Source: Macrostomum lignano
Lineage: Eukaryota
DNA: 64,000 bases
Assembly (NCBI GenBank): GCA_002269645.1
Contig: NIVC01002482.1
Location: 62,304-126,303, forward strand
Reading direction: 5' to 3'
The notes beneath the pieces were generated by a model. That model had not been told where the DNA came from. It made no database searches and was given only the letters and a program-made list of their open reading frames with translations. Within the stretch, counting starts at the first letter, position 1. The number at the start of each line of letters is the position of its first letter. A program made the position numbers and the translations under genes. This document shows, in pieces, positions 814 to 51,638 of this stretch.

Positions 814-1083
814 TGTTTTGATGGTTCATTCAATAAATTGAGTCTTCGCAGTAAGCGACTATTTTTCGGCTACTAGCCAACCGAACAAAACAACCAGCGT
901 GCGCACTCTCTCTGGAGAGGCTGATAACTATATATTGCAATAATTTTAAATAAATGGGGTGGGTGCTGCTGAACATTATAAATGGGGGCTGGGGCTGAAA
1001 CGTACGTATCAAAATCTCTGCTATGAAAGTTACGCGTAGGTGAATGAAAAGTACACTCGTACATGTAAGCCAACTCCTAAACA
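814..1083 (-). repeat. 3' LTR of BEL/Pao element
   Basis: Read base by base, identical to 7577-7846; TG...CA ends; the PPT abuts it. Confidence 0.95.
827..859 (-). other. Spliced-leader-like sequence in the 3' LTR
   Basis: Minus strand GTCGCTTACTGCGAAGACTCAATTTATTGAATG versus recalled M. lignano SL ...GTCTCTTACTGCGAAGACTCAATTTATTGCATG: 31/33 identical. The SL reference is from memory and needs checking. Confidence 0.75.
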
Positions 1084-1690: not shown

Positions 1691-4600
1691 TCACTCGAGA
1701 TAGCACAGTTTGCTCACAGGCCGCACGAATACCGTCCCACCGACCTGGACCTTGGCCACCCGGACTCGATTGTCTGAACCTGGGTAGACTTCGACTACTC
1801 GTCCCAACGGCCAGTGTCCCCGCGGTGAGTCTGCTTTGATGACGAGAACGACATCACCTGGCTGTAAATCACGCTGCGGTCCCGCCCACTTGGCTCTCGG
1901 CTGCAACCCTGGCAGCCATTCGCGCATCCAGCGTCGCCAGACGTGCCTCACGAGTTCTTGGACGCGCCGCCACCGCCGCCTCGGGTCAGCCGCGACGTCG
2001 TCGGGCACATCCGGCGCGAATTGTCCACCAGCTTGACCGTGCAGGAAATGGTTTGGCGTTAGTGGCTCTTCGTCTCTCGGATTCGCCGATTGATAGGTGA
2101 TGGGGCGCGAGTTGATAAGCGCCTCCGCTCCAGTGATCGCTGACTGAAGCTCCTCGTCGGTGACATCTGCGCTGCCCAGAATCGCGTGTAGCGCTCGCTT
2201 CGCAGCCCGAATCATCACCTCGTGGGCTCCACCAAAGTGCGGGGCGGCTGGCGGCTGGAAGTTCCACTTGACTCGCTGCTTGGATGTCTCGCGACTGATC
2301 CTTGTCCTGTCCAGCTCCTCCAGAAGTCGCAGTTCATCTGCACCTTTTACAAAGTTGCCACCGTTGTCAGAATACATAGCCTTGGGTAAGCCACGCCTGT
2401 TCACCATTCGGTAGAAGGCGTTCAAGAAAGAGTCCGCGTCAAGGCTGTAGGTCATCTCGAGGTGTACCGCTCGCGTCTCGAGGCATGTGAACAGCGCCAA
2501 ATAGCGTTTCTGCCTCTTCTTAAATCGGCCTTGAATAGTGACGAACGGCCCTCCCATGTCGACGGCTACGTTCGTGAAGGCTTTTAAGGATCCTGCGACA
2601 CGGGCATCAGGCAGTGGCGCCATCTGTTGTACGATGGGACGAGCTTTCTCTCTCTTGCACACAGCGCATTCAACCTCCCACTCGCGAATAGCTTCCCGAG
2701 CACAGATAACCCAATACTTGGCTGACAGCGCCGCCAGAGTTTGGTTAGTCCCACCATGGCTCTGCTGCTCGTGATATTGTTTGATGATCAGCTTGGTGAT
2801 CCAATGCTTCCGCGGCAAAATAGATGGATGTCTTGCTGCAAATGGCGCCTGTGGCCTGAATTTCAACCGGCCATCCACTCGTAGGACTCCTGCTGCATCA
2901 CGTACCGGCTGCAAGCACCGCAGCTTCTTCTCGTTCACTGTATCCGTCTTGAACGCTTCCTCCTGAGCTAACCTTACCAAACGCTCCTCGACCTCCTCGA
3001 GCTCATCCACCAACAGCTCACCGCCGCTCCGCTGATACTTCTCCGTCTGACAGTTCCGAATGAACCGCAACACCCAAGCGAAGACGCGCTGCAGTCGATG
3101 GAAACTAGAGAATCGCTCTGGTTTGAGTCGCCAGCCTGTCTTGTCTTCTTCATCGGTGGTGACCAGACATACGGGCTCTGCACAACGCTTCTGGATGCTT
3201 GCTAGCTCTCTTCGACGGGTATTCGCCTCAGTAGTTTCTGGCGCAACTGGAATCGGCATTTCTGGCCAATCGTTTGAGCACCTCGCCAAGAATCCAGGGC
3301 CGTTCCACCACAGCTCGTTGTCCATCAGCTCTTGCACACTGCAGCCACGGGATGCCACATCCGCTGGATTCAGACCTGTTGGAACGTACCGCCATTGATT
3401 TGGCTGCACCTGCTGCTGGATGAAGGCGACTCGGTTCGCAACGAAAGGCTTGAACGCTCTACTCTGCCTGCGAATCCACCAAAGCACATTGTGACTGTCA
3501 CTCCAAAACACCACAGACTCAATCGCGATCTCCAACGCCTCGGCCACTGCCCTTGCGAGCCGAAGTCCTAGGACTGCCGCCATCAACTCCAGTCGAGGGA
3601 TGCTCACCGCCATCAATGGTGCTACCTTAGCCTTTGCAGCAACGAAACGGACCGTCGTCTTACTCATCGTTTCGCTCCGCAGATATACGACGGCTCCGTA
3701 GGCCTCTTGCGATGCGTCTACAAACGAGTGAAGTTCGATGGATCCGTTGTCTGGACGCAGACACCGAGGCACGGCTAGTCTCGTAGCTTTGGAGAGCTCA
3801 CTGGTCCACTGAAACGCTTGATCAGCCAACTCAGGATCCAACGCTTCATCCCACCCAACACCTTGTTGCCATGCCAACTGCAGCATTATCTTTCCTGTGA
3901 TAACTACCGGAGCTAGGAAGCCACAGGGGTCAAACACCTCGGCCACACCGCGCAAAAGCAGTCTCTTCGTCATCACCTTGCCGCTAGCATTCGACTCGCT
4001 GATGGAAATTCCTAGGACGTCCTCTTTCGCATTCCAATTCACTCCAAGCGCCTTAGCGGTTCGGGCCTCACCTTTCAATAGCAACTCGGCGCGTTCTGCG
4101 CGGTCCTCGACTGGAACGTGTTGCAGCACTTCTAACGAATTCGACATCCATTTGCAAGCTCGCATCCCTGCCTTGCTCCATAATTCTACGAGTTGTTGGA
4201 AGAGTTTCACCGCTTGGCCAACGGTTTCTACGGAGTCTAGACTGTCGTCCATATAAGTGGAATGCAGCACGGTGTTGGCCGCCAGCGGCAGCTGTTGCTG
4301 ATAGTGTCGCGCATTCTCCTGTGCCACAAACTGAGCCAGAAACGGAGAGCAGTTTACGCCAAATACCACACTGCAGAACTCATAGCTCTTCGGCGTTTGC
4401 TTCAAGTCTAAGTCTCGCCACAGAAATCGGAAAAATCTTCTGTCCTCCGGCGCAATTCGAACTCTCAGATACATCTCCTCGATGTCGGCTGCTAGCGCCA
4501 CGGGATGCTTCCGGAACCGTAGGAGCACCTTTAGCAAATCCTGCTGCAACTTCGGTCCCGTATGAATGGTGTCATTTAGGCAGACCCCATTGCTCCGAGC

Positions 4601-5299
4601 CGCTGCATCAAACACAATTCGAACTTTGGTCGTCTCCTTATCGGCCCGCACTATCGCGAAATGCGGCAAGAACCACTGGCCAGCCTGACTTGGCTCGCTG
4701 ATGCCGACCTCCCGCACATAGCCTTTTGCCAGATGCTTGTCTATCACAGCCTGGTACGCCTTCGCTAGCTCCGGGTTCTTCAGCAAGCGCTTTTCTGTGC
4801 TGACGAGACGCTGTAGGGCAGCTTCGTTGTTCATAGGTAGTTCTTCCGGATTCTTTTTCCAAGGAATCGCCACTTGAAACCTGCCGTTCTCCATCTTCAA
4901 GGATGCTCGTGTCGCTTCTACGATCTTTTGATCTTCAGCGGACATTCTGGCCTGCTGTCCTCCATCTGGCACTTCATCGATCTCCCACATCTTCCGCAGA
5001 AGATCAGATGCCTCGTTCTCCGCCGTCACCGTAAAGAATGTCTGCTGCTGCTGCTCTTCTGCAGTTCCTACTTGATTCACTGGTCCAACGCAGGTCCACC
5101 CAATTGGCGTCAGTCTGGCAATCGGCTCTCCAGGTTGCCCACCTACTTCGCGACAGGCAAAGTGCAAGTCTGCATTGTCCACACCAATGAGCATATCCAC
5201 AGTCTGCTTCCCTTTAATTTTGTCGAACGGCACGCCCCTCAGATGAGCCCAACGCTTTGCAAGCTGGCTCCAATCTACGGCTTCCATCCCACCGGTCAC
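1691..5299 (-). CDS. BEL/Pao pol: reverse transcriptase, RNase H, integrase
   Basis: YMDD RT motif; Pao RNase H IELHSFVDASQEAYGAVVY; integrase H..H..C..C and DDE (VAVDMGGP, YSDNGGNF, FGGAHE); C-terminal W-rich domain. Confidence 0.95.
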   Translation of the reverse strand: MTGGMEAVDWSQLAKRWAHLRGVPFDKIKGKQTVDMLIGVDNADLHFACREVGGQPGEPIARLTPIGWTCVGPVNQVGTAEEQQQQTFFTVTAENEASDLLRKMWEIDEVPDGGQQARMSAEDQKIVEATRASLKMENGRFQVAIPWKKNPEELPMNNEAALQRLVSTEKRLLKNPELAKAYQAVIDKHLAKGYVREVGISEPSQAGQWFLPHFAIVRADKETTKVRIVFDAAARSNGVCLNDTIHTGPKLQQDLLKVLLRFRKHPVALAADIEEMYLRVRIAPEDRRFFRFLWRDLDLKQTPKSYEFCSVVFGVNCSPFLAQFVAQENARHYQQQLPLAANTVLHSTYMDDSLDSVETVGQAVKLFQQLVELWSKAGMRACKWMSNSLEVLQHVPVEDRAERAELLLKGEARTAKALGVNWNAKEDVLGISISESNASGKVMTKRLLLRGVAEVFDPCGFLAPVVITGKIMLQLAWQQGVGWDEALDPELADQAFQWTSELSKATRLAVPRCLRPDNGSIELHSFVDASQEAYGAVVYLRSETMSKTTVRFVAAKAKVAPLMAVSIPRLELMAAVLGLRLARAVAEALEIAIESVVFWSDSHNVLWWIRRQSRAFKPFVANRVAFIQQQVQPNQWRYVPTGLNPADVASRGCSVQELMDNELWWNGPGFLARCSNDWPEMPIPVAPETTEANTRRRELASIQKRCAEPVCLVTTDEEDKTGWRLKPERFSSFHRLQRVFAWVLRFIRNCQTEKYQRSGGELLVDELEEVEERLVRLAQEEAFKTDTVNEKKLRCLQPVRDAAGVLRVDGRLKFRPQAPFAARHPSILPRKHWITKLIIKQYHEQQSHGGTNQTLAALSAKYWVICAREAIREWEVECAVCKREKARPIVQQMAPLPDARVAGSLKAFTNVAVDMGGPFVTIQGRFKKRQKRYLALFTCLETRAVHLEMTYSLDADSFLNAFYRMVNRRGLPKAMYSDNGGNFVKGADELRLLEELDRTRISRETSKQRVKWNFQPPAAPHFGGAHEVMIRAAKRALHAILGSADVTDEELQSAITGAEALINSRPITYQSANPRDEEPLTPNHFLHGQAGGQFAPDVPDDVAADPRRRWRRVQELVRHVWRRWMREWLPGLQPRAKWAGPQRDLQPGDVVLVIKADSPRGHWPLGRVVEVYPGSDNRVRVAKVQVGGTVFVRPVSKLCYLE

Positions 5300-6714
5300 T
5301 TTCTCAGTTGTGTGGGCCGTAACTGTGGCACGAAAGGCGCCGTCCAGACTGCGGATGTCGACCTCAACCGGAACGTCTGAAAGGTGCTCACCTGGCCGTT
5401 CAGAACCTTTACCGTCATCGGTTCGAGGTTGCCTTCCAAGCCGAGTTCCGCTGCAACGTCAGAGTTCAGGTACGACCGGGTGCTAGCGTCGTCCAGCAAG
5501 ACATTCACTCGGACTTCCCGACCGCCGTTGGATAAAATCACGGGCACAGTCCTCAGCGCTATTGACGGCGATGTTCTGGCCAGTAAAGTGCATGCCTCTT
5601 GCGGCTCTTGAACTGTGCTCTTCTTCTCCTGGAAGGACTTTGGTCTTTCGATCGTTTTGGGCGACCCCCCTTCATGCGGATTCGCCGTTGTCGCCGCCGG
5701 CCCTCGTTGATGCAGCAGCCGATTATGGTTTGCTTTGCAGCCATCAACACCGCACACTCTCGCTCGCTTGCACGCACCGGCTAGATGGTTTGCTCCCAAG
5801 CAGCAGAAGCACAGGCGCTTGTCACGAACCGTCGCCCATCTGGCTCCAGGTTCCATTCGTTGAAACCTTGGGCAGCTCCAAACTCCGTGCTGTTCTCCGC
5901 AGAGACCACAACCTTTTCGCCCTTCCGCCTGTTCTTTGTTTTGGCTATTCGAATCATTCGTCTTCACAAAAAACGAGCGTGCTGCGGCTGCCCCTCGGGA
6001 AACAGTTTTCTTGGCTTTTACACTGTCGTGCCGTCCGGTCTCACCGGAAGAAGCCACGCCTCTTACCGCCTCACACGCTACTGTCATGTACTCTGCCTCC
6101 GTCAGAAGCCATCGATGCAACGTTCTGAGCGAATCTTCTTTCCTAGCTTCTCCGATCCACCGATGAAAACGAGCTAGGGTTTCGGTTGGCAGCTTCTTTT
6201 GCACTCTCAAGTACATAAGTCCATTGTTGCTTAGCTCACTCTCTCGCCCTGCAGCCTGTAGATTAACTACCGTAACATCCAGCAAGTCGGCCAGCTTTTT
6301 TAATTGACTTGCATTCTCTATCTGAATAGGTTGGAAACTATCCAAGTCCTCCAGTGCCAGCATCAGTCTTCGTCTCTCTCCACCATACTCCCGCTCAAGC
6401 CTTTCCAGAGCCGCTTTGTAGGCGAACTCCGAGTAGCCAAGATTCGCAACAAGTTTTAATGCCTCTCCTCGCAGCGACTGGCGCAATTGCAACAACTTAT
6501 AGGCTTCTGAAGATGGCGAGGCATGCACGCAGGCATAGAAAGCCGCCCGCCATCCTTCAAACTCCCGTTTGTCTCCACTAAACACCGGTATCGCAACTCT
6601 CTGCAACTGCCTCCACATATCCTGACCGATTCTTTCCTCAGCCCAAGCTTTCGCTGTACATTCTGCTGCGGCGGCCGGTGAAGCCCCAATTGGCGAATTA
6701 GCTCCACCGTACAT
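5296..6714 (-). CDS. BEL/Pao gag core, three Cys/His knuckles and aspartic protease
   Basis: FSGDKREFEGWRAAF (DUF1759-like), CGLCGEQHGVWSC / CFCCLGANHLAGAC / CGVDGCKANHNRLLH, protease LLDDASTRSY. The frame is open from 6828. Confidence 0.88.
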   Translation of the reverse strand: MYGGANSPIGASPAAAAECTAKAWAEERIGQDMWRQLQRVAIPVFSGDKREFEGWRAAFYACVHASPSSEAYKLLQLRQSLRGEALKLVANLGYSEFAYKAALERLEREYGGERRRLMLALEDLDSFQPIQIENASQLKKLADLLDVTVVNLQAAGRESELSNNGLMYLRVQKKLPTETLARFHRWIGEARKEDSLRTLHRWLLTEAEYMTVACEAVRGVASSGETGRHDSVKAKKTVSRGAAAARSFFVKTNDSNSQNKEQAEGRKGCGLCGEQHGVWSCPRFQRMEPGARWATVRDKRLCFCCLGANHLAGACKRARVCGVDGCKANHNRLLHQRGPAATTANPHEGGSPKTIERPKSFQEKKSTVQEPQEACTLLARTSPSIALRTVPVILSNGGREVRVNVLLDDASTRSYLNSDVAAELGLEGNLEPMTVKVLNGQVSTFQTFRLRSTSAVWTAPFVPQLRPTQLRK

Positions 6715-6809
6715 AGCTTGGATACCTAGCTGTCCGCGGGGTTGGTTAGAATCAGCGTGGTCACACTTGCCGCCAGTTGGGGTGGGTGGTATTGATTTTT
6801 TTCCGGCCT

Positions 6810-7514
6810 TTACTCTCTCACCCCTTGCTCAGCGCTCCTTAGTTGATCTGACCCTCCCCCAATTAAGGGGTTGACTGAAGGGTCGGCTTGAACCATGGGG
6901 TTGGCGACTGGTACTGAGTACGCAGCTTGCGATTGGACGGCCGCTTCTACCCGTAGTTGAGAGGAGTACAATTGATCATTTGCACTCGCTGACGTCTCTG
7001 CCAGTCTTAGCGCATCCAATCTGACATCTAACTCGCGCTGCCTCTCTGCAAACTCCTGCTGCATTCTGCGCTCCTCCTCCTCCATCTCTATCCGCTGCCG
7101 CCTGACTGCCTCCAACTCCTTCTGTCGCATCTCTTTCTGCTCGATCTCCCTCGACTCTAGTCGCACCTCTCGTTCCCTCTTGCGCAATTCTCTCAGCAAA
7201 TTTACAATCTCACCGTACTCAGTCTCCAGCTTTTCCAACTCCTTTACTGTCTGGACTTGCACTGGTAGATTCCCGACGACCTCGGGCAGAATCGCTTGTA
7301 GCACCGCACTAACTCGCTCGTAGTGGTCATCCAGAGTGCCGGCCAGCGGTTCCACGTCCGCTAAAGTAGCTCCGTCCGAGCCCAATACCTTCAGTAGACG
7401 ATTCCGCTGCTTCGTGAACGCGCACTTGTCGACCGCTTTTCTGGCCTTCAGCAAAATGAGACGGCTGTCTCCCTCCGGCACTTGTTCTTGCATCTCTGCT
7501 TCTTCATCAGACAT
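6810..7514 (-). CDS. BEL/Pao gag N-terminal coiled-coil region (separated from the rest by a -1 frame break)
   Basis: 234-aa ORF starting 42 nt after the PBS; E/R/Q-rich helical sequence; overlaps the next open frame at 6810-6828. Confidence 0.75.
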   Translation of the reverse strand: MSDEEAEMQEQVPEGDSRLILLKARKAVDKCAFTKQRNRLLKVLGSDGATLADVEPLAGTLDDHYERVSAVLQAILPEVVGNLPVQVQTVKELEKLETEYGEIVNLLRELRKREREVRLESREIEQKEMRQKELEAVRRQRIEMEEEERRMQQEFAERQRELDVRLDALRLAETSASANDQLYSSQLRVEAAVQSQAAYSVPVANPMVQADPSVNPLIGGGSDQLRSAEQGVRE

Positions 7515-7574: not shown

Positions 7575-7576
7575 GA

Positions 7577-7846
7577 TGTTTTGATGGTTCATTCAATAAA
7601 TTGAGTCTTCGCAGTAAGCGACTATTTTTCGGCTACTAGCCAACCGAACAAAACAACCAGCGTGCGCACTCTCTCTGGAGAGGCTGATAACTATATATTG
7701 CAATAATTTTAAATAAATGGGGTGGGTGCTGCTGAACATTATAAATGGGGGCTGGGGCTGAAACGTACGTATCAAAATCTCTGCTATGAAAGTTACGCGT
7801 AGGTGAATGAAAAGTACACTCGTACATGTAAGCCAACTCCTAAACA
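7577..7846 (-). repeat. 5' LTR of BEL/Pao element
   Basis: Identical to 814-1083; followed after 2 nt by the PBS on the minus strand. Confidence 0.95.
7590..7622 (-). other. Spliced-leader-like sequence in the 5' LTR
   Basis: Same 33-mer as 827-859; it ends 13 nt before the LTR end and PBS. Confidence 0.75.
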
Positions 7847-37845: not shown

Positions 37846-39924
37846 TTAATCATGGTTCGCCGCTCTGCGCTTGTTACGCTTACTCGACTTTTTGGATTTT
37901 CCGCCACTCTGCTTGAACACCTGATGATCCAACTGCTCGCTATATGACAGGTACACCGACTCCAGCGGCAGCTCTGCAAACTTATCTTCCATCTCCTTCT
38001 TCTCTTTCTCCTCGGCTTCGGCGGCCCGCTTGCGCATGTTGTTGCCTGAGTAGGCTATACCCTTCAGCTGCCACTCGCCTGTGGATTCGTTCCAAATAAT
38101 GTTCCGCTCAATGAGCTCCTGATACTCCCGAGGAATGCATTGGTCAATGATCAGCAACTGCTGGCGCAGATCTTTGCTTAGTTGGCGCACATTTTCCAGC
38201 AGGCCTTCCATCTCGCGTTGGTGAACCTCGTTGATTTCTACAAGCTCATCCTTCGTCTTTGTGTAAAGTTCCCAAACCTTTTTCAGCTTACGCGTCTTTC
38301 CTTCTTCCTCTTCGCCAAGACTGCGATAGCGATCCTCAATCTCAACTTTGGCCTGCTCTTTCTCTTTCAGCTGAGCGCGGAGTCGCTCCTCTTCCTTCTT
38401 GCGCTGTTGCAGCTCCAGATTTGTCTTTTCAAGTAGCTTCTCCTGCGCCTCAGATTTCTCCAGCAAGTTTTCACCGCCAACAATAAGCCGACCCATGAGG
38501 TTCTCCATCTTACGCTGCAGTGCAAGGCGATCCTTCATGTGCTCGTCCAGCTCCTGTTGCTTCGCTTGAAGTCTTTTAAGAGCGTCATTCTTTTCTTTTT
38601 CTGACAAGCGAGAGTCGCTTTCGAGTTTCTTCAAATCAGACTGAAGATTAATCTCAATTTTTTTTATCTCTTCGTCAGACAAGCCACGGAATTGATTGCG
38701 CTTTTTCCTCTCCTTGCCTTCTCCAACGACAACGTCTTCATCATCCTCGTCATCTTCATCATCTTCGTCTCCCTCTGGAATGCCGCCACCATCCTCCAAC
38801 TGCTTCTTCAGATCCTCAATCTCCTTCTGGAACTGTCTCAGCATTGCGTCTTTCGGATCCTCATTGATCTTAGCATTGTTCTTGATGTTCTTTGCCCGAT
38901 TTGCGTATCGTAACGTGCTCATAGTTTCGTCAAAGTTGTAGTCAGCTGGACCAAAGTTGGCGCACATTACGGTCTTGCTGTTGCCTCCAAGTGAGTCCTG
39001 AAGAAGGCGAGTGAGCTTGCTGTTGCGGTATGGAATGTGGGTACTCTTTCCATCGACAAGTGCAGAAATCACGTTGCCAAGGGTACTCAGCGACAAGTTG
39101 ATCTTTGTGGCTTCCTTCAGTCTCACACCAGTGGCTCCGGTCTTTGCCTGACGCTCGCTGCCAGCCAAGTCTACAAGATGCAGCTTGCCTTGTCGGAGCA
39201 TCGTTTTACCAGTCACTGCTTTTTCGGAACATTCCACCGTCACAGTGTAAATTGCATGAGAACGTGAGCTATGCTCGTTCATGTTCGTGGCTCCTACAAC
39301 ACGATTCTTGTTTCCGACGGTCATCAGCTTGTCCATTTCGTCCGGACTGTGACACACAAAGCTGCACAGATCCTTCACGTACACTCCCACATCGGGCCGC
39401 TCTTTCACATCTAGTTTGGCTGTCTGATCCTTGCCCAGCAGGTCGCGCACCTCCTCGTTGTAGATCTCCAGATACGAGACCCGCACAAGAAAGGTCACAT
39501 TGGCTGTCGCCTTGCTGATGGCGCCGAAGATGTGAGCAAACGAGTTCGGGATGATGCCACGGAGCTCAGGTACGGTCCTGACGCCTTCCATCGTGAAAGT
39601 CTTGCCCGTTCCGGTCTGGCCATACGCGAATATCGTGCCATTGTAGCCTTCCAGAACGAAATCGACAATTCGTCTGGCCACTTTGTTATAAATGTCCACC
39701 TGCTTGCTCTGCATGCCGAACACGTGATCGAATGTAAATGTCTTAGGCTCTCCCGCGTGACTGGCCATCCCTTCTTGGCGAACAACATTTGGCTCCGTGA
39801 TTTCAACTGTTCCTCTGAGCTCGTCAATCTTCACAGTCACCTTGTTGCCTTCGGTGATCTCTTTTTGACTGAGTGGCCGGCACCTCACCACCACCTTGAC
39901 GTTGTCTTCCTTTTCTTCCGACAT
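37846..39924 (-). CDS. KIF3A: Kinesin-2 motor subunit KIF3A-like, copy A (692 aa, intronless CDS)
   Basis: GQTGTGKT P-loop, MNEHSSRSH switch I, DLAGSE switch II, KIF3A-type tail [18 protein letters not shown]. Confidence 0.9.
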
Positions 39925-40834
39925 TGCTGGAAAGAGAAAAGGCGTTCTTATAGTAAAATATGGCTGCTACTTTAATAGTTGTTTAGGAGAAACTCTAAAT
40001 GCAAATTGTTTGAAAGTTCTAATGCTAATAGCCTAATACACAGAATAACCTATTTTTACATTGTTTACAAATTTAGCCAAACGGAAATCGAAAATTATAC
40101 ATAGAGAAGATTATTAACTTATTGATTTGAATTTATTTGCAAGTAAATTTTCTTACTACAATATAAACTCATGAATTGTATACTAGTAATATTAAAAAGT
40201 ATCTGTTGTAAAAGAGTTTGTCATCTTCAAAGTTCACAAATGCATTAAAAATATGAGATAGTTCGATTAGGCCTCACTAGATAGGCTGGATAAAAAGCAG
40301 AAAGCACATTTGCGGAACAATCAAATACGGAATCAGTAAAGGTTTTCAAGCACTTCTTAAGGCGCAGTTTCAAATCCTTGTGATGTTCTGAAGGCCAATC
40401 AGTACAAATAGCATAGTATTGTACTTAATTGCCTGAAAGCTAGAAAGTATAGCCAAGTAATTCTACATGTATCGCTTAATTGCGATAATCTCAAAAGCAA
40501 AATAGGTATTAAAATGGTTATTTTGCTGGCTTTAAATCCAAAGTTGAACACAGTAGCGTAAGATTTGTAAACAATCGTACTTATACACATATAAAGTATC
40601 GTGGCAGAGAAAAACAGAGAATACCAGAGTGAGTTGGAGATACGAAGCTTCCTCAAAAGTATATTAGTTTTACAAATCGAGTGAACAATTTACCTATGAT
40701 GTATTTTTTTTAAAAACGGACAAAAACGAACTACAATAAAGTGAAAATAACGCTTCAAAACAAAACGCTTGTGCGTTGATCAGTATTTCTATATCGAAAC
40801 CGCCGCGATTTTACCCAGGATAAATACAACTGAA

Positions 40835-42267
40835 TCACGGATTTAAAAACAGCACTGCCTGGCTGATTGCAGCTGGAATGGCACACAATCTCCAATGGAG
40901 ACAGTCTGAGCTTCTCCAAACCAACTGATGGTGAAACTGGTCAAGCTCCCGTTCAGGTATGTTTGGATCGTGTTCTGGTCGGAGACGGCCAGCGAAGTGA
41001 CGCTCAATTTCCAGCATCTGCTCATTAGAGAGGCTCTTAAACGCATGCTGCTTACAAACAGAACGCCCGTGTCTGTCTTCTTTACTCGTAGCAGCAGCGT
41101 CTGTAACATCGCAGTTCGTGCCTGAAATTCTGTCGCAACACTCCAGTTGACTTTTTAACTGTTCAATCTCCTTTTGGAACTGCCTCAGCATCGCGTGTTT
41201 TGGATCCTCGTTAATCTTGGCATTATTAGTGACTCTCTTTGCTCTACAGGCCAATCTTAACGTACTTATAGTCTCCTTATAGTTACAGTCAACTGGACTG
41301 AAGTTGGCGCACATCAATGTCTTGCTGTTACCACCTAGTGAATCCTTAAGTATACGAGTGAGCTTGCTGTCGCGGTAGGGGATGTGGACACTTTTCCCAT
41401 CAACGAGTGCTGATATCACTTTGCCAAAAGGACTCATAGACATGCCTATCTTAGAGGCCTCCTTCAGCCGCACGCCAGTGACTCCAGCGTTTGACTGACG
41501 CTCGCTACCAGCAAAAACTACAAGATGCAGTTTGCCTTGAAGCACCACTATTTTACCATTTTGGCCTTGCTCTAAACACTCGATTGTTACTGTTAACACC
41601 CTGTTGGATCTAGAGCTTAGCCTGCCCATGCGTGTCGCATGAAACATTCGATTCCTTGCGCCATCGATTAAAAGTTGGTTTATTTCGTCCGGACTGTGAC
41701 ACACAAAGCTGCACAGATCCTTCACGTACACTCCCACATCGGGCCGCTCTTTCACTTCTAGTTTGGCTGTCTGATCCTTGCCCAGCAGGTCGCGCACCTC
41801 CTCGTTGTAGATCTCCAGATACGAGACCCGCACAAGAAAGGTCACATTGGCCGTCGCCTTGCTGATGGCGCCGAAGATGTGAGCAAACGAGTTCGGGATG
41901 ATGCCACGAAGCTCAGGTACGGTCCTGACGCCTTCCATCGTGAAAGTCTTGCCCGTTCCGGTCTGGCCATACGCGAATATCGTGCCATTGTAGCCTTCCA
42001 AACGAAATCGACAATTCGTCTGGCCACTTTGTTATAAATGTCCACCTGCTTGCTCTGCATGCCGAACACGTGATCGAATGTAAATGTCTTAGGCTCTCCC
42101 GCGTGACTGGCCATTCCTTCTTGGCGAACAACATTTGGCTCCGTGATTTCAACTGTTCCTCTGAGCTCGTCAATTTTCACAGTCACCTTGTTGCCTTCGG
42201 TGATCTCTTTTTGACTGAGTGGCCGGCACCTCACCGCCACAATAAAATTATTTTCTTCTTCCGACAT
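40835..42267 (-). pseudogene. KIF3A-like copy B: frameshifted, diverged and truncated
   Basis: 1-nt deletion at ~42001 relative to copy A (GTTCTGGAA to GTTTGGAA). Switch [10 protein letters not shown], switch II VFAGSE; stalk ends after ~90 aa. Confidence 0.75.
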
Positions 42268-43280: not shown

Positions 43281-45350
43281 TTATGCAGCAGATTTCTTTT
43301 TCCTACCGGCACTTTTAGCCGACTTTTTGCCTTTGGCGGACCGAGCGCTTGGCTTGAACACGGCACTGTCCAGCCGCTCACTATAGCGCAAGTACACCGT
43401 CTCCAGCGGCGGCTCCGCAAACTTCTCCTCCAACTCTTTCTTCTCTTTCTCCTCCGCTTCAGCGGCTCGCTTGCGCATGTTATTGCCTGAGTAGGCCACA
43501 CCCTTGAGTTGCCACTCGCCGATGGCATCATTGTATACAACGTTGCTCTCGATGAGTTCCTGATATTCGCGCGGGATGCATTGGTCAATAGCGAGCATCT
43601 GCAGGCGCAGATCTCTGCTCAGTTGTCGCACGTTTTCTAGCAAGCCTTCCATCTCGCGCTGGTGCTCTTCTTGCACGTCGGCTAGCTCAGACTTTGCTTC
43701 CATGTACACCTGCCAAAGACGCTTTAGCTTCCGCGTCTTAGCAGTGGCTTCTTCGTCCAGACTGCGGTAGCGATCTTCAATCTCGACCTTTGCTTGCTCC
43801 TTCTCTTTTAACTGCGTTCGAAGTCGCTCTTCCTCCCGGCGCCTAGCCTCCAACTCTTTTGCATTCTGTTCAAGAAGCCGCTCCTGTTCAGTCGCCTTCT
43901 CCAACAGGTTCTCGCCACCAACGATAAGACGCTTCTCCAGGTCCGACAGCTTCTGTTCAAGTGCCCGCTGCTCTTGACGGTGACGCGTGAGCTCGCGCTC
44001 CTGCGATTCCAGCTGCTGGCGAACGCGGTCGCGCTCCTCTTCAGCCATGTTTTGATCTTTTTCTAATCGACGGCGATCTGCGGCAATGCGCTGCTCGATT
44101 TCCTGCATCTGGTCTTTAGAAAGGCTTTTAAGGGCGCGCCGCTTGCGAACTCGACGTTCTTGCCCGTCTTCGCCAACAACGACGTCCTCATCATCCTCGT
44201 CATCTTCATCATCTTCGTCTCCCTCTGGAATGCCGCCACCATCCTCCAACTGCTTCTTCAGATCCTCAATCTCCTTCTGGAACTGTCTCAGCATTGCATC
44301 TTTAGGATCCTCATTGATCTTAGCATTGTTCTTGATGTTCTTCGCCCGATTTGCGTATCTCAAAGTACTGATTGTTTCATCAAAATTGTAGTCAGCTGGA
44401 CCAAAGTTGGCGCACATTACGGTCTTGCTGTTGCCTCCAAGTGAGTCCTGAAGAAGGCGAGTGAGCTTGCTGTTACGGTATGGAATGTGGGTACTCTTTC
44501 CATCGACAAGTGCAGAAATCACGTTGCCAAGGGTACTCAGCGACAAGTTGATCTTTGTGGCTTCCTTCAGCCTCACACCAGTGGCTCCGGTCTTTGCCTG
44601 ACGCTCGCTGCCAGCCAAGTCTACAAGATGCAGCTTGCCTTGTCGGAGCATCGTTTTACCAGTCACTGCTTTTTCGGAACATTCCACCGTCACAGTGTAA
44701 ATTGCATGAGAACGTGAGCTATGCTCGTTCATGTTCGTGGCTCCTACAACACGGTTCTTGTTTCCGACGGTCATCAGCTTGTCCATTTCGTCCGGACTGT
44801 GACACACAAAGCTGCACAGATCCTTCACGTACACTCCCACATCGGGCCGCTCCTTCACTTCTAGTCTGGCTGTCTGATCCTTGCCCAGCAGGTCGCGCAC
44901 TTCCTCGTTGTAGATCTCCAGATACGAGACCCGCACAAGAAAGGTCACATTGGCTGTCGCCTTGCTGATTGCGCCGAAGATGTGAGCAAACGAGTTCGGG
45001 ATGATGCCACGGAGCTCAGGTACGGTCCTGACGCCTTCCATCGTGAAAGTCTTGCCCGTTCCGGTCTGGCCATACGCGAATATCGTGCCATTGTAGCCTT
45101 CAATGACACAATCAACAATGGGCCTGGCCACTTTGTTATAAATGTCCACCTGTTTGCAGGTCATGCCGAAAACGATGTCAAAAGTGAATGTTTTCGGTGG
45201 CTCACTAGGCGGCCCGGCCGGGTTGGTGATCTCAATTGAGCCGCGCAGCTCATCAACTTTCACAATCACCTTGTTGCCGGCGTCCTTCTCCTTCTGATTG
45301 ATGGGGCGACAGCGCACCACCACGCGTACATTGTCGCCGGCATCGGCCAT
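43281..45350 (-). CDS. KIF3A: Kinesin-2 motor subunit KIF3A-like, copy C (689 aa, intronless CDS)
   Basis: All motor motifs intact; [10 protein letters not shown] stalk motif and [18 protein letters not shown] tail. Confidence 0.92.
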
Positions 45351-45919
45351 CAGAGACTACTTTCTGGAAAGCGGAAGAATAGTGAAATATTTTAATACGG
45401 CGTAAAAGCAACAGAGCAGAAAATCAAGCTACGATTTATCTTCATTAAAACGGAGGAGTGGAAGTATATGCATGAAGTACCATAGTAAAATCAACTAAGT
45501 TCTCCTAACTTTGTTTGAAAACGTCTTTTAAAAGCAAACTGAAGGTGGAGATGGATGCGGTAATGATTTTGATTTTAAGGCCTAGATTAGGCATGCCTAC
45601 AATACAAGAGTACATACAGTCTGCCTTTTGAAAACTTTGCACGAGCGTAACTGTCCACAATGTGTAGAATTACAACAGTTTATTTAATTTTTTTCAATTA
45701 TACGCTTTATAGGCAAACGTGAGCATTTTATAAACCTAATGAGGCATGAAAACTGGTTATATTCTTACTATAATCAACCATTCGAATTTTAAATGCAATG
45801 CGTCATATTGAAGGAGTTCCCAAGGCATCATTCGCGACATTTCTGCTGCTCACAGGCTTCTTTGTGTTGAATATCCCTGTGTAATCCAAAGTTCCCACCG
45901 CCCACACTAAAGTCAATAA

Positions 45920-46657
45920 TTATTCCCGAGAGTTCATCAAGCTGACAAGAGACGCATCCAGATCGCCAGGATCGACCGTCCGCCACTCCGGCGCCAGCTG
46001 TGGCAGGCGCTCGGTCCGCCTGTGAATCTCCGGCCACAGCAGGTCGAACATTCGCTCAGCCCCGGCCGGGCCAAAGTGCAGCCCGTCGCAGAACAGCCCC
46101 CGCCAATCGCCGTCCAGCCCGTGCTCCAGAAAGCCGTCGTAGGTGTTGCAGAAAGTGGCGCCAGCAGCCTCGGCTGCCCGCCTGCAAGCGTCTCGATAAG
46201 GCGGCACGTCTTCCAGCGTCTTGGTGCCGGGCGTGCCGAACCGCTCCTGGCAGCAGCGGTCCCACGCGTCGCCGTCAACTGGCGGCGGGGAGCAGAAAAT
46301 CAACGCATCGCGGCTGAGCCCGGCTGGCCCAGTCAGGTAGTCAGCGAGGCGGACGAGCTCGGCCTCGTAGTCGGCGGTCGGCAGGTGCTGGGTGGTGCTG
46401 CCGGCACGGTTCGAGTCGTTAGCGCCCAGGAAGATGACAAAAGCAGCAACTGCAGTCTTCAGACTGTCGGCTGGGAACAGATCTGGCGCGATCAGCCTGC
46501 ACCAGCGACTGTTGTAGCCCGAGAAGCCACGGTTGACGATGTCGCAGCGGCGGGCCAGGGAGTCAGCTATGCGAGCAACCCAGCCAGAGGTGCTGGACCA
46601 GCCAAACTGGGTCAGTGAGTCACCAAGAAGGATCACACGAGGCAAAATGTGGGACGC
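45920..46657 (-). CDS. IAH1: IAH1-like SGNH/GDSL esterase (no in-frame ATG near the N-terminus; begins at a splice acceptor)
   Basis: LLGDSLTQF, NRGFSGYNSRW, IFLGANDS, DGLHF motifs. Acceptor TTCTGCAG|GCG at 46658/46657, in phase 0. Confidence 0.85.
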   Translation of the reverse strand, partial: ASHILPRVILLGDSLTQFGWSSTSGWVARIADSLARRCDIVNRGFSGYNSRWCRLIAPDLFPADSLKTAVAAFVIFLGANDSNRAGSTTQHLPTADYEAELVRLADYLTGPAGLSRDALIFCSPPPVDGDAWDRCCQERFGTPGTKTLEDVPPYRDACRRAAEAAGATFCNTYDGFLEHGLDGDWRGLFCDGLHFGPAGAERMFDLLWPEIHRRTERLPQLAPEWRTVDPGDLDASLVSLMNSRE

Positions 46658-47336
46658 CTGCAGAAGTTCATATTTTGATTGCCAATGTCAATAATTCTAT
46701 TGGAAAGAAAACAAAAGGGAAAAATTAACAAGCAATGGTTTAAATTGTTTTATCCACCTAGCCATTTATAGATTATATTAGCAATGCTTTCTTATATAAG
46801 TTTCTATTAGACAAAACAAAGAATCCTCTAGTAAAAACAAGAATTTTAAAGATGTGCATATATTAGAAGAAGGACAGGATCTGAGCAAAAATTGGAATCC
46901 CAATCTTGCCAAAAAATTAATCCTATTCAACCTTTAGCCTATATATAGTAGGATATTTAGGTATAGCAGCTTGTAAGTAAGCATAAAAGTATAAAAAAGA
47001 AAACCAATAAAGTTTGCTTTAATAGTTAAATCCATCAGCAATATAGCTCATATTTTGGTTTGTCAAGGGCCATCTTCTGGGTCTTAGGGTCTAAGATATA
47101 TTTTTCATGCATATATCAGATTATATAAGAAAACATTTCTATGAATATAGTCCAAAGGGCAAATCAAAGTGCTGATTGTCCAAAGAGAGTATATTATAGA
47201 TAGTTCATTTAGACAAGCATGTTGCAAATGTTTTTGCCTATACTTAGAATACCTTGAGTAAAAGACCCAGACCACTGTGAATAAACTAAATATAAAGACT
47301 TGGTTTCTAGTTTTTGATATAGATTGATTCCAGTAT

Positions 47337-48621
47337 CCCGCTGGAAAATAGGGCAGGATTTCGGTTTGGATTTTTTTAATTTCGGCCAGATATTCTCTGC
47401 ATCTGTTCAGTGGGAGAATATCCGGTCGTTTCTTTGGATAAGTGACGCCAACTTTACATATCCGGATGCTTTGTTCGGATATTGTAGTTCTGTATCCGGA
47501 CGAAACATCTGGATATGTACATTGAATCCAGACGTAAGTCCGGAAATGTATCCGGCTATAAGGCCGGATTGAAGCCACATATCCAGATGTTTCATCCGGA
47601 TATCACGTCTTTATCCGGACGAAACATCCGAATATGTGCATTGAATCTGTACGTAAGTTCGGAAATGTATCCGGCTATAAGGCCGGATTGAATGTCCATT
47701 TTTATCCGGACGAAACATCCGAATATGTGCATTGAATCTGGACGTAAGTCCGGAAATGTATCCAGCTATATCGTGCCGATTTTCACATTAATTTAGTTTT
47801 CCAAAGGATAATGCAGCATAATCTGCTGTTTCGCTCGTACAGATAGATTCTGTTAATTCAAATGAATAAATTGTAGCAATTCTTTTGTGCATTTTAGTTG
47901 ACAAAAAGTTGTCACTATTATTTCTACATGCATACAATTTGCCTAAAAAATTACCTCACTATTATGACTAGGAGACGTATATGTATACATACTATGAAAA
48001 CCGATTACTCAAAAGTAAATATTCATCTATATTTTGCAAATCAATCTTGCTGCCTATTCAATATCTAACTGTATATCCATATCCTAATATTTCAACTTGT
48101 TTAGCTAACAGCAATTTTACTACTTGATTAAAGGGCAATAACTGAAAATAAAAAACTTAAGTCCAGTGTTCAAGTAGCTTTCATTGACATTGGTGCCGAA
48201 TTGTATTTGCACACAAGAAAATTTCAGACACTTAATTTCAGGCATTGCAGATAAAATTTAGTCAGGTACAGTTGTAACTGGAAATTCAGTGACCACATTA
48301 GCTCTCATGGACAGCTTTCTAAAATCCAGGGTTGATGTGAGCAAAAAATTGAAGAAGGCCATATATGCATTGAAAAAACAGTGCGGTAAGTATCCGAACC
48401 AAGAGGTTTGGTATCCGGATGAAAAGTCCGGAAATTTTTGTCCGGATAAGTCATATATCCGGGTGATAATCCAGATATTCGTCCGGATACGACTTGTCCA
48501 GATATAGTTCGGATAAAATGTCATATCTGGACATATCTGGCCATTCATTCGGAAAAGTGCCCCTATCCGGATCTAGATACGCTATATCCGAACCAAATAT
48601 CCGTCCCTATTTTCCAGCAGG
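47337..48621. mobile_element. Non-autonomous CMC (EnSpm-like) element with ATCCGGA subterminal repeats
   Basis: TIR CCCGCTGGAAAATAGGG...CCCTATTTTCCAGCAGG, flanked by AT on both sides (2-bp TSD); many ATCCGGA motifs in both arms. Confidence 0.75.
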
Positions 48622-49231
48622 ATGCTAAGTCTAAGTTAAGTTTAGCTTATAAGATATATTTTGCTTGCTTTATTTTGTTTTAGGACCTAGTTAGAAACCA
48701 AAATTGAACCTTTTATTACCTTATTTTAAGCTAAAGTAAAATCATTTAAGAAATTATAATAATTGCAAAAAAGAATGGAATAAATAATTCAACATTTTCA
48801 CAGTTAAGTATATAGATAATTTAAACCTATATTTGATATAAATATGTAAAATACAATGGTAAAAATGTGAAAAGGGCTTTATATTCTAGTTTAGTTAGTC
48901 TAACCTATGCTTTCAAAGTTGAAAGCCACATGCTTATAATTTAACATAACTACATAAATAGAATTTGTTCAAAGCCCAACCAAAATCTTTTTATTTCATA
49001 ATCTTGACACAATGTATAGGTACATTAAATAATGGAATCAGTGAGCAATGTCTACCAAAAACTATGTTAGCTATAAAAAATAATACGCTGCAAGCAATCG
49101 AAAGTACTTAAAATATCAGTTAATGCACTGTCCAAAATATCTTGCTTTTCGATTGTTATGCAACAGATCAATTGAAATAATTTCGTTAATTTGCATTGAA
49201 CAGATATAAAAAAGCAAAGTTTATTTACATG

Positions 49232-50529: not shown

Positions 50530-51428
50530 TCATTTCTTTTGGCTCGCCTTGTCAGCATTCGCGTCCACAGCCGCTGGTCTGACGGAGGCAGCCAGCACCT
50601 CGGGTGGCATGAAGTTTCCGGCCAGGATGCGCAGAAACTCCTGAAAGTCAATCTCACCGTCGCCATCTGTGTCGCAGTCGCGAATTATACCCTGCGCTTC
50701 GCCGTAGCCGCCTGTCAAGCCCAACGAGGACATGAATTCGGACAGCTCCTGGGGCCCCACTCGACCGGAGGAGTCGCGGTCGAATATGGCGAAGGCCCGG
50801 CGCAGGTCGTCCATGCAGCGGCCGCTGGCCATGTTGCGGCAGATCACCGTCATGAACTCCGGAAAGTCGATCAGGCCGTCGCCGTCGCTGTCCACAAACT
50901 GCAGCATGGCCTGACAGACAGAGGTATACGAGCTTACATGCTTCTATACGTCTTAGTCGCAGTCCATTCTCTGCTCTATCTCCTCCCCCCACTCGCTCTA
51001 TATACATCTACCTACTCTCCCCCCCCCAACAAACAATGTACATATCAGGCCGGCGCGGCAGTACGAGTTTATCCCCCTCTCATGATATTTAATCTTATTC
51101 TGACCCTGTCATTCTCCGTCAATCTCTCCTTTTCTCCCAGCCTTCTCGCTCCCTCCATCTGCCTCTGGCATCCTGGCCTATATAGAGCTGTTTTCCCAAA
51201 ACTGATGTCCAATGATCAGCTTAGGCATCTACGCAGAAAGAGAGCTCTCACATCCAGCTGCTGTTCGCTGACCCTGTAGCCGAACGTCTTCATCACGTGA
51301 CCCAGCTCCGACCGCGATATGAACCCGTCGCCGTCCTGATCAAACAGAGCGAAGGCGTCGCGGAATTCTGCAATCTGCACGCCCTCGACGTCAACTACGG
51401 GCGCTGAGGACTCTTTTCGTTTGGCCAT
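50530..51428 (-). CDS. Calmodulin-like protein, 4 EF-hands, 2 coding exons (51428-51252, 50910-50530), 185 aa
   Basis: EF loops DQDGDGFISRSE, DSDGDGLIDFPE, DRDSSGRVGPQE, DTDGDGEIDFQE; phase-0 GT-AG intron. Confidence 0.9.
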
Positions 51429-51638
51429 TGAAAAGTTTGAAGCCACCTGGGCTGACGCTGAGAGCTGTCGGTCTCTACCGCCAGGCCGCACACCGCTGTG
51501 CACACATTCTTATATAGCCTCACCCCTCTCTCTAGTTCTTTCCAGATTCTGCAAGCCTCTTGCGTGCTTCTTCATCTCTCAGCCTTCTCTCCCCCCTGTG
51601 CTCTTTCGCACAATGGCATCTCTGTACTCAGCTTCACT

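What the first reader, a model, noticed from the sequence alone, without database searches (positions are those of the whole stretch)
46640..46665. IAH1-like ORF lacks its own ATG; the flatworm SL terminal AUG would supply it in frame
Seen: the esterase frame is open from a splice acceptor (TTCTGCAG|GCG TCC CAC ATT TTG CCT CGT GTG ATC CTT CTT GGT GAC) in phase 0, and the first in-frame ATG comes only after the catalytic DGLH motif. Established: flatworm spliced leaders end in AUG, and in Schistosoma this AUG can act as the initiator Met. Inference: trans-splicing gives MASHILPRVILLGDSLTQF, a normal-length IAH1 N-terminus with G at +4, so this gene may depend on trans-splicing for translation.
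Basis: partly seen in the sequence, partly recalled or inferred. Interest (0 to 1): 0.7.

Follow-up and report, generated by a model that had tools for sequence, protein, structure and literature searches.

The report
Esterase gene started by spliced-leader AUG
A flatworm (Macrostomum lignano) esterase gene has no start codon of its own and most likely borrows the ATG at the end of the spliced leader added by trans-splicing; this mechanism is already known in flatworms, so it is a clean example, not a discovery.

Summary
An intact 245-codon IAH1-type SGNH esterase frame (46657..45920) opens directly after a CTGCAG acceptor. An in-frame TGA closes it 11 codons upstream (46690-88). Its first in-frame ATG is codon 203, after the catalytic DGLH. 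The window is Macrostomum lignano Mlig_3_7 (NIVC01002482.1). This species' 35-nt spliced leader ends in ...TTGCATG, and its trans-splice acceptor motif [T/C]TNCAG fits this site. The deposited gene model begins at GCG 46657 with no Met. In that annotation, mature mRNA 5' ends are cut at peaks of spliced-leader reads, so this is indirect evidence for trans-splicing here. Joining the leader gives MASHILPRVILLGDS, which puts the nucleophile Ser at residue 15, the commonest position among 108 homologues. The 3.9 kb upstream is AT-rich and holds no ATG exon with a consensus donor in phase. I saw no junction read, so trans-splicing and use of the leader AUG remain inferred (about 0.8). Rivals are a distant cis exon, a 1-nt assembly deletion that would activate the ATG at 46671, near-cognate initiation, and a dead gene. 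Leader-AUG initiation was shown in Schistosoma in 2006 and is acknowledged for Macrostomum. Interest is low to moderate: a new member of a known kind.

The parts
45920..46657 (-). Single-exon coding region of an IAH1-type SGNH/GDSL esterase: 245 codons plus TAA, with no ATG before codon 203
   Evidence: Translation. Pfam Lipase_GDSL_2 5e-18 and Lipase_GDSL 4e-15. Identical to the deposited protein P0001, which begins ASHILPRV. Yeast Iah1 3MIL by sequence, 8e-18, and by fold, TM 0.81/0.83. AF2 pLDDT 95.1. Invariant G12 D13 S14, G44, G47, G78 N80 D81 and D191 G192 L193 H194 are all kept.
46658..46663 (-). Splice acceptor CTGCAG, the inferred spliced-leader trans-splice site. The exon starts at 46657, in phase 0
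   Evidence: Sequence. It matches [T/C]TNCAG, the top motif at M. lignano trans-splice acceptors (PMC8629364). It is the only AG in the open in-frame stretch. The deposited CDS starts at the next base.
46702..46724 (-). Polypyrimidine tract TTTTTCCCTTTTGTTTTCTTTCC in the presumed outron, 42-66 nt upstream of the acceptor AG
   Evidence: Read directly from the sequence. Its role is inferred.
46633..46671 (-). Out-of-frame upstream ATG (46671-69) opening a 12-codon ORF, MNFCRRPTFCLV*. It lies in the outron and trans-splicing would remove the ATG
   Evidence: It is also the basis of the assembly-frameshift rival: one extra T in the TTTT run at 46647-44 would join it to the esterase frame.
46688..46690 (-). 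In-frame TGA that closes the esterase frame 11 codons upstream of the acceptor
46789..46798 (-). TATATAAGAA, a candidate TATA box for the outron, 132-141 nt upstream of the acceptor. It would give a primary 5' end near 46765 and an outron of about 105 nt
   Evidence: The same 10-mer lies 25-34 nt upstream of the deposited transcript start of the EF-hand gene at 51482. There are 3 matches in the window against 0.05 expected. Promoter function is inferred.
45679..45684 (-). AATAAA poly(A) signal about 240 nt after the stop codon
   Evidence: Read from the sequence. Inferred.
45364..45369 (-). TTCCAG acceptor 13 nt before the ATG of the downstream kinesin gene (43281-45350). This gives a possible two-gene operon, esterase then kinesin, with about 555 nt between the esterase stop and this acceptor
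   Evidence: The operon criterion (same strand, less than 1 kb apart, downstream gene trans-spliced) is from PMC8629364. Whether the kinesin is trans-spliced was not tested.

Best explanation
This is the only IAH1-type (isoamyl acetate-hydrolysing esterase 1 homologue) gene found in the Macrostomum lignano deposit. It is one exon, and that exon begins at a trans-splice acceptor. The primary transcript probably starts about 100 nt upstream. It carries only out-of-frame AUGs, so it cannot yield the enzyme. Spliced-leader trans-splicing replaces this outron with the 35-nt leader, whose last three bases are AUG. The exon starts in phase 0 with GCG, so the leader AUG becomes codon 1 with G at +4, behind a 32-nt 5' UTR made only of leader sequence. 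Translation then gives MASHILPRVILLGDS..., a complete 246-residue SGNH hydrolase with the nucleophile Ser at position 15. Shown here: the frame, the phase, the lack of an own ATG, the intact enzyme, the acceptor motif, and a deposited model that starts at the acceptor. Taken from the literature: the leader sequence and the ability of flatworm leader AUGs to initiate translation. Inferred: that leader reads map to this site, and that ribosomes use this AUG.
For: The frame, phase and lack of ATG are. The source is M. lignano Mlig_3_7, NIVC01002482.1, and exon base 46657 equals record position 108960. The deposited protein P0001 is 245 aa and starts ASHILPRV, exactly at the acceptor. That annotation cuts mature mRNA 5' ends at peaks of trimmed spliced-leader reads (TBONE) and then calls ORFs with TransDecoder (PMC5730564). 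A control in the same window supports this reading: the EF-hand gene's deposited CDS also lacks ATG, and it starts at 51482, where the transcript 5' end is expected after a TATA box. So ATG-less models there mark the transcript 5' end. The leader sequence and the [T/C]TNCAG acceptor motif come from PMC8629364. The only AG in the open stretch fits that motif and the phase. In 108 Met-starting homologues the nucleophile Ser sits at a median position of 15.5, with 15 the commonest value; the leader Met gives 15. The protein is a complete, confident fold with beta-1 at residues 7-12, and yeast Iah1 is its closest structure. The 3.9 kb upstream is 26-34% GC apart from a transposon, against 65% for the exon. 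It holds 0 ATG...GTRAG phase-0 exons, with 1.5 expected by chance. Cheng et al. 2006 found the leader AUG in frame in 28% of S. mansoni trans-spliced transcripts and required by more than 40 cDNAs (as summarised in PMC9851317; also PMC5832876). Authors of Macrostomum genome papers call the terminal ATG a translation start codon (PMC10468722).
Against: I saw no leader-exon junction read, 5' RACE product or N-terminal peptide. The exact sequence MASHIL... is not in the 15-billion-protein collection, and the supplementary tables I searched held nothing on this gene. The leader AUG has U at -3, a weak context. The two neighbouring kinesin genes have the same kind of acceptor 13 and 2 nt before their own ATGs. 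There a leader AUG would be out of frame, opening 37- and 14-codon ORFs. If those genes are trans-spliced, ribosomes must often skip the leader AUG. The Schistosoma orthologue has its own genomic ATG, so dependence on the leader is not conserved across flatworms.
Confidence: 0.8

Rival explanations
1. The acceptor is a cis-splice site. A first exon carrying the ATG lies further upstream and was missed by the transcript assembly.
For: Flatworm acceptors can serve both cis- and trans-splicing (PMC12582326). Relaxed donor scans (GTR, GT) find AT-rich ATG...GT candidates upstream, in numbers close to those from shuffled sequence.
Against: There are zero ATG...GTRAG phase-0 candidates in the 3.9 kb up to the next gene, with 1.5 expected. 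The relaxed candidates are 17-47% GC and mostly inside a transposon. None lies between the acceptor and the transposon edge at 47332. The deposited model, built from RNA-seq, starts at the acceptor.
Confidence: 0.07
2. Assembly error. The TTTT run at 46647-44 is really TTTTT, so the ATG at 46671 is the true start, giving MNFCRRPTFLPRVILLGDS with Ser at position 19, and no splicing is needed.
For: The assembly is PacBio-based. The required change is a 1-nt homopolymer deletion. Ser at 19 is within the range seen in homologues.
Against: The assembly was polished with Pilon using Illumina DNA and RNA-seq reads (PMC5730564). The deposited transcript and CDS begin at 46657, so they exclude ATG 46671. 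GC content falls from about 65% to below 30% at the acceptor. That exact protein is not in the collection.
Confidence: 0.04
3. Translation starts at a near-cognate codon inside the exon: TTG at 46645 giving MPRVILLGDS, or GTG at 46636. It is then independent of the leader AUG.
For: Both would still give family-like N-termini, with Ser at 10 or 7, and some homologues are that short. Near-cognate starts are used in trans-spliced mRNAs of other taxa (PMC9851317).
Against: In the trans-spliced mRNA an in-frame AUG with G at +4 comes first. In the unspliced RNA, out-of-frame AUGs come first. Initiation at UUG or GUG is generally much weaker than at AUG (established knowledge).
Confidence: 0.04
4. 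The gene is a transcribed but untranslated relic that lost its ATG.
For: It has no own ATG. I found only one copy in the deposit, even though the assembly is highly duplicated (PMC10468722).
Against: The 245-codon frame is open. All 15 invariant family columns, including the Ser, Asn, Asp and His catalytic and oxyanion residues, are kept. The fold prediction is very confident. The frame is in phase with the leader AUG.
Confidence: 0.05

Closest known systems
[quoted passage not shown]
   Same: A flatworm leader ending in AUG is spliced in phase 0 onto an exon with no own start codon, so the leader supplies Met1. In that study the AUG was in frame in 28% of trans-spliced transcripts, and more than 40 cDNAs required it (PMC9851317).
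   Different: The species is a free-living macrostomorph with a different 35-nt leader, and the gene is different. Here the evidence is genomic plus a deposited gene model. There are no cDNA or transfection data.
slORFs: open reading frames created by spliced-leader addition (slORFfinder, PMC9851317)
   Same: The ORF exists only in the trans-spliced mRNA, because the start codon lies in the leader.
   Different: Most described slORFs are alternative or overlapping frames, often with near-cognate starts, and are detected by ribosome profiling. This one is the main, conserved enzyme frame. No profiling data were available here.
IAH1 / yeast Iah1p (PDB 3MIL), SGNH (GDSL) hydrolase family
   Same: It has all four SGNH blocks and Pfam GDSL domains. 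3MIL is the best match by sequence and by fold. Animal IAH1 homologues are the best database hits at 33-43% identity.
   Different: It is a single exon with no genomic ATG. The Schistosoma orthologue is a 17.8-kb multi-exon gene with its own ATG. Substrate and activity were not tested.

Membership tests
Spliced-leader-AUG-initiated mRNA (flatworm type) | The organism's spliced leader ends in AUG | tested here: met
   Source genome identified as M. lignano. Its leader is CGGTCTCTTACTGCGAAGACTCAATTTATTGCATG in PMC8629364.
Spliced-leader-AUG-initiated mRNA (flatworm type) | Leader-exon junction reads or cDNA at this acceptor | not testable with these tools
   No M. lignano RNA data can be reached with these tools. 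Indirect support only: the deposited CDS starts at 46657, and the annotation pipeline cuts at leader-read peaks.
Spliced-leader-AUG-initiated mRNA (flatworm type) | Leader AUG in frame with the main ORF, with no stop between them | tested here: met
   Leader plus exon gives a 246-aa ORF starting MASHILPRV.
Spliced-leader-AUG-initiated mRNA (flatworm type) | No own in-frame AUG that could give a functional protein | tested here: met
   The first in-frame ATG is codon 203, after His194. An in-frame TGA lies 11 codons upstream of the acceptor.
Spliced-leader-AUG-initiated mRNA (flatworm type) | Protein N-terminus derived from the leader AUG | not testable with these tools
   This needs N-terminal proteomics or a reporter assay.
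SGNH/GDSL hydrolase, IAH1 subfamily | Block I GDS nucleophile, block II Gly, block III GxND and block V DxxH all present | tested here: met
   G12 D13 S14, G44/G47, G78 N80 D81 and D191 G192 L193 H194 are invariant across 34 homologues and present here.
SGNH/GDSL hydrolase, IAH1 subfamily | Scores above the curated family thresholds, with IAH1 as closest relative | tested here: met
   PF13472 scores 66.7 bits (cut-off 32.9) and PF00657 scores 56.9 bits (cut-off 23.6). 3MIL gives 8e-18 by sequence and Foldseek 6e-20 with TM 0.81/0.83, ten orders of magnitude better than the next fold.
SGNH/GDSL hydrolase, IAH1 subfamily | Esterase activity on short-chain acetate esters | not tested
   No biochemical data.
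M. lignano operon (Ustyantsev and Berezikov criteria) | Adjacent same-strand genes less than 1 kb apart, with the downstream gene trans-spliced | tested here: inconclusive
   The esterase stop at 45920 and the kinesin acceptor at 45364 are about 555 nt apart on the same strand, and the TTCCAG motif is present. Trans-splicing of the kinesin is not verifiable here.

The most novel reading that the evidence does not exclude
Translation of the only IAH1 homologue found in the M. lignano deposit is strictly gated by trans-splicing. The gene has lost its own ATG, which the Schistosoma orthologue keeps. The unspliced RNA carries only out-of-frame AUGs. The whole 5' UTR is the leader. In a flatworm where transgenesis works, this locus would be a natural, minimal reporter for asking when the conserved flatworm leader AUG is used and when it is skipped, for example against the neighbouring kinesins, where it would be out of frame.
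Probability: 0.6. Interest if true: 0.35.

Novelty: new member of a known kind. Interest (0 to 1): 0.25.

Why it matters
The finding has three modest uses. It flags a deposited '5'-partial' CDS that is probably complete once the leader ATG is added, so protein sets for this genome under-call Met1 for such genes. It gives a concrete, testable case of obligate leader-AUG initiation in the one flatworm with routine transgenesis. Together with the neighbouring kinesin acceptors, it illustrates the open question of how ribosomes handle a leader AUG that is out of frame in about two thirds of targets. It does not reveal a new mechanism.

Tried and rejected
1. I looked up the exact proteins MASHIL..., MNFCRRPTFLPRV... 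and MPRVILL... in the 15-billion-protein collection. None is present, and the cluster of P0001 has one member, so no transcript-derived copy can be reached.
2. I searched for the gene (IAH1, isoamyl, scaf2482) in the supplementary tables of PMC5816591 and PMC5173321 and found nothing; PMC8629364 has no supplementary files held.
3. Cheng et al. 2006 and Wasik et al. 2015 are not held, so I cited them through secondary papers.
4. I tried to get deposited gene calls for the rest of the window from two long ORFs. Neither is on record.
5. No Macrostomum orthologue is in the protein database. The best non-self hit is 43% identical in the alignment (42% by BLASTP) and comes from an ENA contig of unknown organism with three tandem IAH1-like genes.
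6. A trematode-like Logan transcript (L003) has ...GGATTTGCATG before its ORF, but 83 nt of upstream sequence, so I did not accept it as a leader junction.
7. I considered bacterial contamination or horizontal transfer because of the 65% GC and the lack of introns. I rejected it because the best hits are animal IAH1 proteins and the neighbouring kinesin genes are also single-exon.
8. The alternative AG at 46697-96, just after the pyrimidine tract, does not fit the motif. A leader AUG spliced there would meet a stop after 3 codons.

Full report
**What is in the sequence.** The feature is on the minus strand. Read 5'->3' it is ...aatcaaaatATGaacttctgCAG|GCG TCC CAC ATT TTG CCT CGT GTG ATC CTT CTT GGT GAC TCA.... 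The AG is at 46659-58 and the first codon GCG is 46657-55. The frame runs 245 codons to TAA at 45922-20. An in-frame TGA at 46690-88 closes it 11 codons upstream, with no ATG in between. The first in-frame ATG is 46051-49 (M203), nine residues after His194 of the DGLH block. An ORF from that ATG would be 43 aa. The nearby ATG at 46671-69 is out of frame and reads MNFCRRPTFCLV*.

**What the gene is.** The product matches Pfam Lipase_GDSL_2 (5e-18) and Lipase_GDSL (4e-15), both above their curated cut-offs.
- Its best named relatives are animal 'isoamyl acetate-hydrolyzing esterase 1 homolog' proteins at 33-43% identity.
- The only solved relative by sequence is yeast Iah1 (3MIL, 8e-18).
- In an alignment of 34 homologues, all 15 invariant columns are present here. 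These include G12 D13 S14, G44, G47, G78 N80 D81 and D191 G192 L193 H194.
- AlphaFold2 gives a mean pLDDT of 95.1 and a pTM of 0.92. Strand beta-1 is at residues 7-12, and only six coil residues precede it.
- Foldseek puts 3MIL first (E 6e-20, TM 0.81/0.83), ten orders of magnitude ahead of other SGNH folds.

It is an intact enzyme gene that lacks only a start codon.

**Where it comes from.** The exact protein is on record once, in NCBI GCA_002269645.1, contig NIVC01002482.1. This is the Macrostomum lignano Mlig_3_7 assembly. The window is the last 64 kb of that contig, and window 46657 equals record position 108960. The deposited protein (P0001) is 245 aa and starts ASHILPRV, so the submitters' CDS begins at the first base after the AG, without Met.

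**Why that matters.** According to the genome paper, reads containing the spliced leader were trimmed and mapped. Their peaks were used by the TBONE pipeline to cut transcriptional units into mature mRNAs, and ORFs were then called with TransDecoder (PMC5730564). An ATG-less CDS in this deposit therefore means that the frame is open up to the transcript's 5' end. A control in the same window shows this. The EF-hand gene's deposited CDS starts with GGC at 51482. That codon does not follow an AG. It lies downstream of a TATATAAGAA box that ends 25 nt before it, and the gene's own Met is at codon 19. For the esterase, the transcript 5' end falls directly after a CAG. This is the signature of a cut at a leader-read peak.

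**The leader and the acceptor.** M. lignano has one 35-nt leader, CGGTCTCTTACTGCGAAGACTCAATTTATTGCATG. The top motif at its trans-splice acceptors is [T/C]TNCAG (PMC8629364). The site here is CTGCAG. It is the only AG in the open in-frame stretch 46687-46616. About 3% of AGs on this strand fit the motif, and one phase in three fits. A 23-nt pyrimidine tract lies 42-66 nt upstream of the AG. Joining leader and exon gives a 246-codon ORF, MASHILPRVILLGDSLTQF..., with G at +4 and a 32-nt 5' UTR made only of leader. The next ATGs in the mRNA are far downstream and useless.

**N-terminus length.** In 108 Met-starting homologues, the nucleophile Ser sits at a median position of 15.5, and 15 is the commonest value. 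The leader Met puts it at 15. This fits the model. It does not exclude the rivals, whose Ser positions of 19, 10 and 7 also occur in the family.

**Upstream region.** From the acceptor to the stop of the next minus-strand gene (50530), GC content is 26-34%. The exception is a roughly 1.3-kb element with terminal inverted repeats (47332-48626). The exon is 65% GC. With the species' donor consensus GTRAG, there is no ATG-containing phase-0 exon, against 1.5 expected. With relaxed donors, the candidates are close to the numbers from shuffled sequence, AT-rich and mostly inside the transposon. None lies between the acceptor and 47332. A TATATAAGAA box at 46798-89 is identical to the one upstream of the EF-hand gene start. 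There are 3 copies in the window against 0.05 expected. It could drive a primary transcript with an outron of about 105 nt. That is inference.

**Mechanism proposed.** A short outron carrying out-of-frame AUGs is replaced by the leader. The leader AUG then becomes Met1 of the esterase. Without trans-splicing, no functional product is possible.
- Shown here: the anatomy, the phase, the intact enzyme, and a deposited model that starts at the acceptor.
- From the literature: the leader sequence, and the finding that flatworm leader AUGs can initiate. In S. mansoni the AUG was in frame in 28% of trans-spliced transcripts, and more than 40 cDNAs required it (Cheng et al. 2006, summarised in PMC9851317; also PMC5832876, and PMC12582326). 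[quoted passage not shown]
- Inferred: junction reads at this site, and use of this AUG.

**Caveats.**
- I could reach no RNA or peptide data.
- The leader AUG has U at -3.
- The two full-length kinesin genes downstream have TTCCAG acceptors 13 and 2 nt before their own ATGs. A leader AUG there would be out of frame and open 37- and 14-codon ORFs. If those genes are trans-spliced, the leader AUG must often be bypassed.
- The Schistosoma orthologue has a genomic ATG and many introns, so the arrangement is lineage-specific.

**Rivals.**
- A distant cis exon: 0.07.
- A 1-nt homopolymer deletion in the assembly that would put ATG 46671 in frame (MNFCRRPTFLPRV...): 0.04. Pilon polishing with DNA and RNA reads counts against it, and so does a transcript model that excludes that ATG.
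- Near-cognate initiation at TTG 46645 or GTG 46636: 0.04.
- A dead gene: 0.05.

**Comparison and verdict.** It works like the leader-AUG-initiated mRNAs of Schistosoma and like slORFs in general. Membership is met for every feature that sequence can test, and is untested for junction reads and the protein N-terminus. It is a new example, in M. lignano, of a known mechanism. It is useful as an annotation correction and as a candidate reporter locus, but it is not surprising to a specialist. Interest is 0.25.

Noticed in passing
window 7590-7624 and 827-861 (minus strand), inside LTRs at about 7575-7845 and 813-1083: There are two copies of a spliced-leader-like 35-mer, TAGTCGCTTACTGCGAAGACTCAATTTATTGAATG. 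It matches the M. lignano leader at 31 of 35 bases and ends TTGAATG. Each copy lies 15 nt before the 3' end of an LTR of a BEL/Pao retrotransposon (ORFs 1691-7514 with Peptidase_A17, RVT_1, integrase zinc-binding (Integrase_H2C2) and DUF1759 domains). A tRNA-type primer-binding site, TGGTAGCAGAGCGTGG, follows the 5' LTR. This looks like a captured leader sequence. A 2025 paper on M. lignano LTR elements does not mention it.
   Followed up: partly
window 37846-39924, 40835-42001, 43281-45350 (minus strand): There is a tandem array of three kinesin genes with motor domains. Two are full-length single-exon genes (692 and 689 aa), 77% identical overall, with long stretches of 100% identity in the motor domain, which suggests gene conversion. 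Between them is a truncated copy with degraded motor motifs (for example DLAGSE changed to VFAGSE). It is absent from the deposited annotation and is probably a pseudogene.
   Followed up: partly
window 45364-45369 and 39927-39932 (minus strand): Both full-length kinesin genes have a TTCCAG acceptor, 13 nt and 2 nt before their own ATG. If they are trans-spliced, the leader AUG would be out of frame and open overlapping ORFs of 37 and 14 codons. The esterase and the first kinesin are about 555 nt apart on the same strand, so they are a possible operon.
   Followed up: partly
window 47332-48626: This is a roughly 1.3-kb element bounded by 28-nt terminal inverted repeats (86% complementary). It has many subterminal TATCCGGA-type repeats and an 85-nt unit in three copies. 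It is probably a non-autonomous DNA transposon in the esterase upstream region.
   Followed up: no
window 50530-51482 (minus strand): The deposited CDS of the EF-hand gene starts with GGC at 51482, at the likely transcription start after a TATATAAGAA box that ends 25 nt upstream. It has 18 codons before the probable true Met (MAKRKESS...). The deposited protein is over-extended at its N-terminus.
   Followed up: yes
window 46779-46799 and 47121-47141: A 21-nt inverted repeat (90% complementary, 321 nt between the arms) carries TATATAAGAA on each arm. The 10-mer occurs 3 times in the window against 0.05 expected, and two copies lie upstream of minus-strand genes. It may be a small element with terminal inverted repeats that supplies a TATA box.
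   Followed up: no
L004 440-3675 (ENA ERZ25069296 contig): The closest non-self homologue (42-43% identity) sits in a tandem array of three IAH1-like genes next to adenosine-deaminase-domain genes, on an 18-kb contig from an unidentified eukaryote.
   Followed up: no
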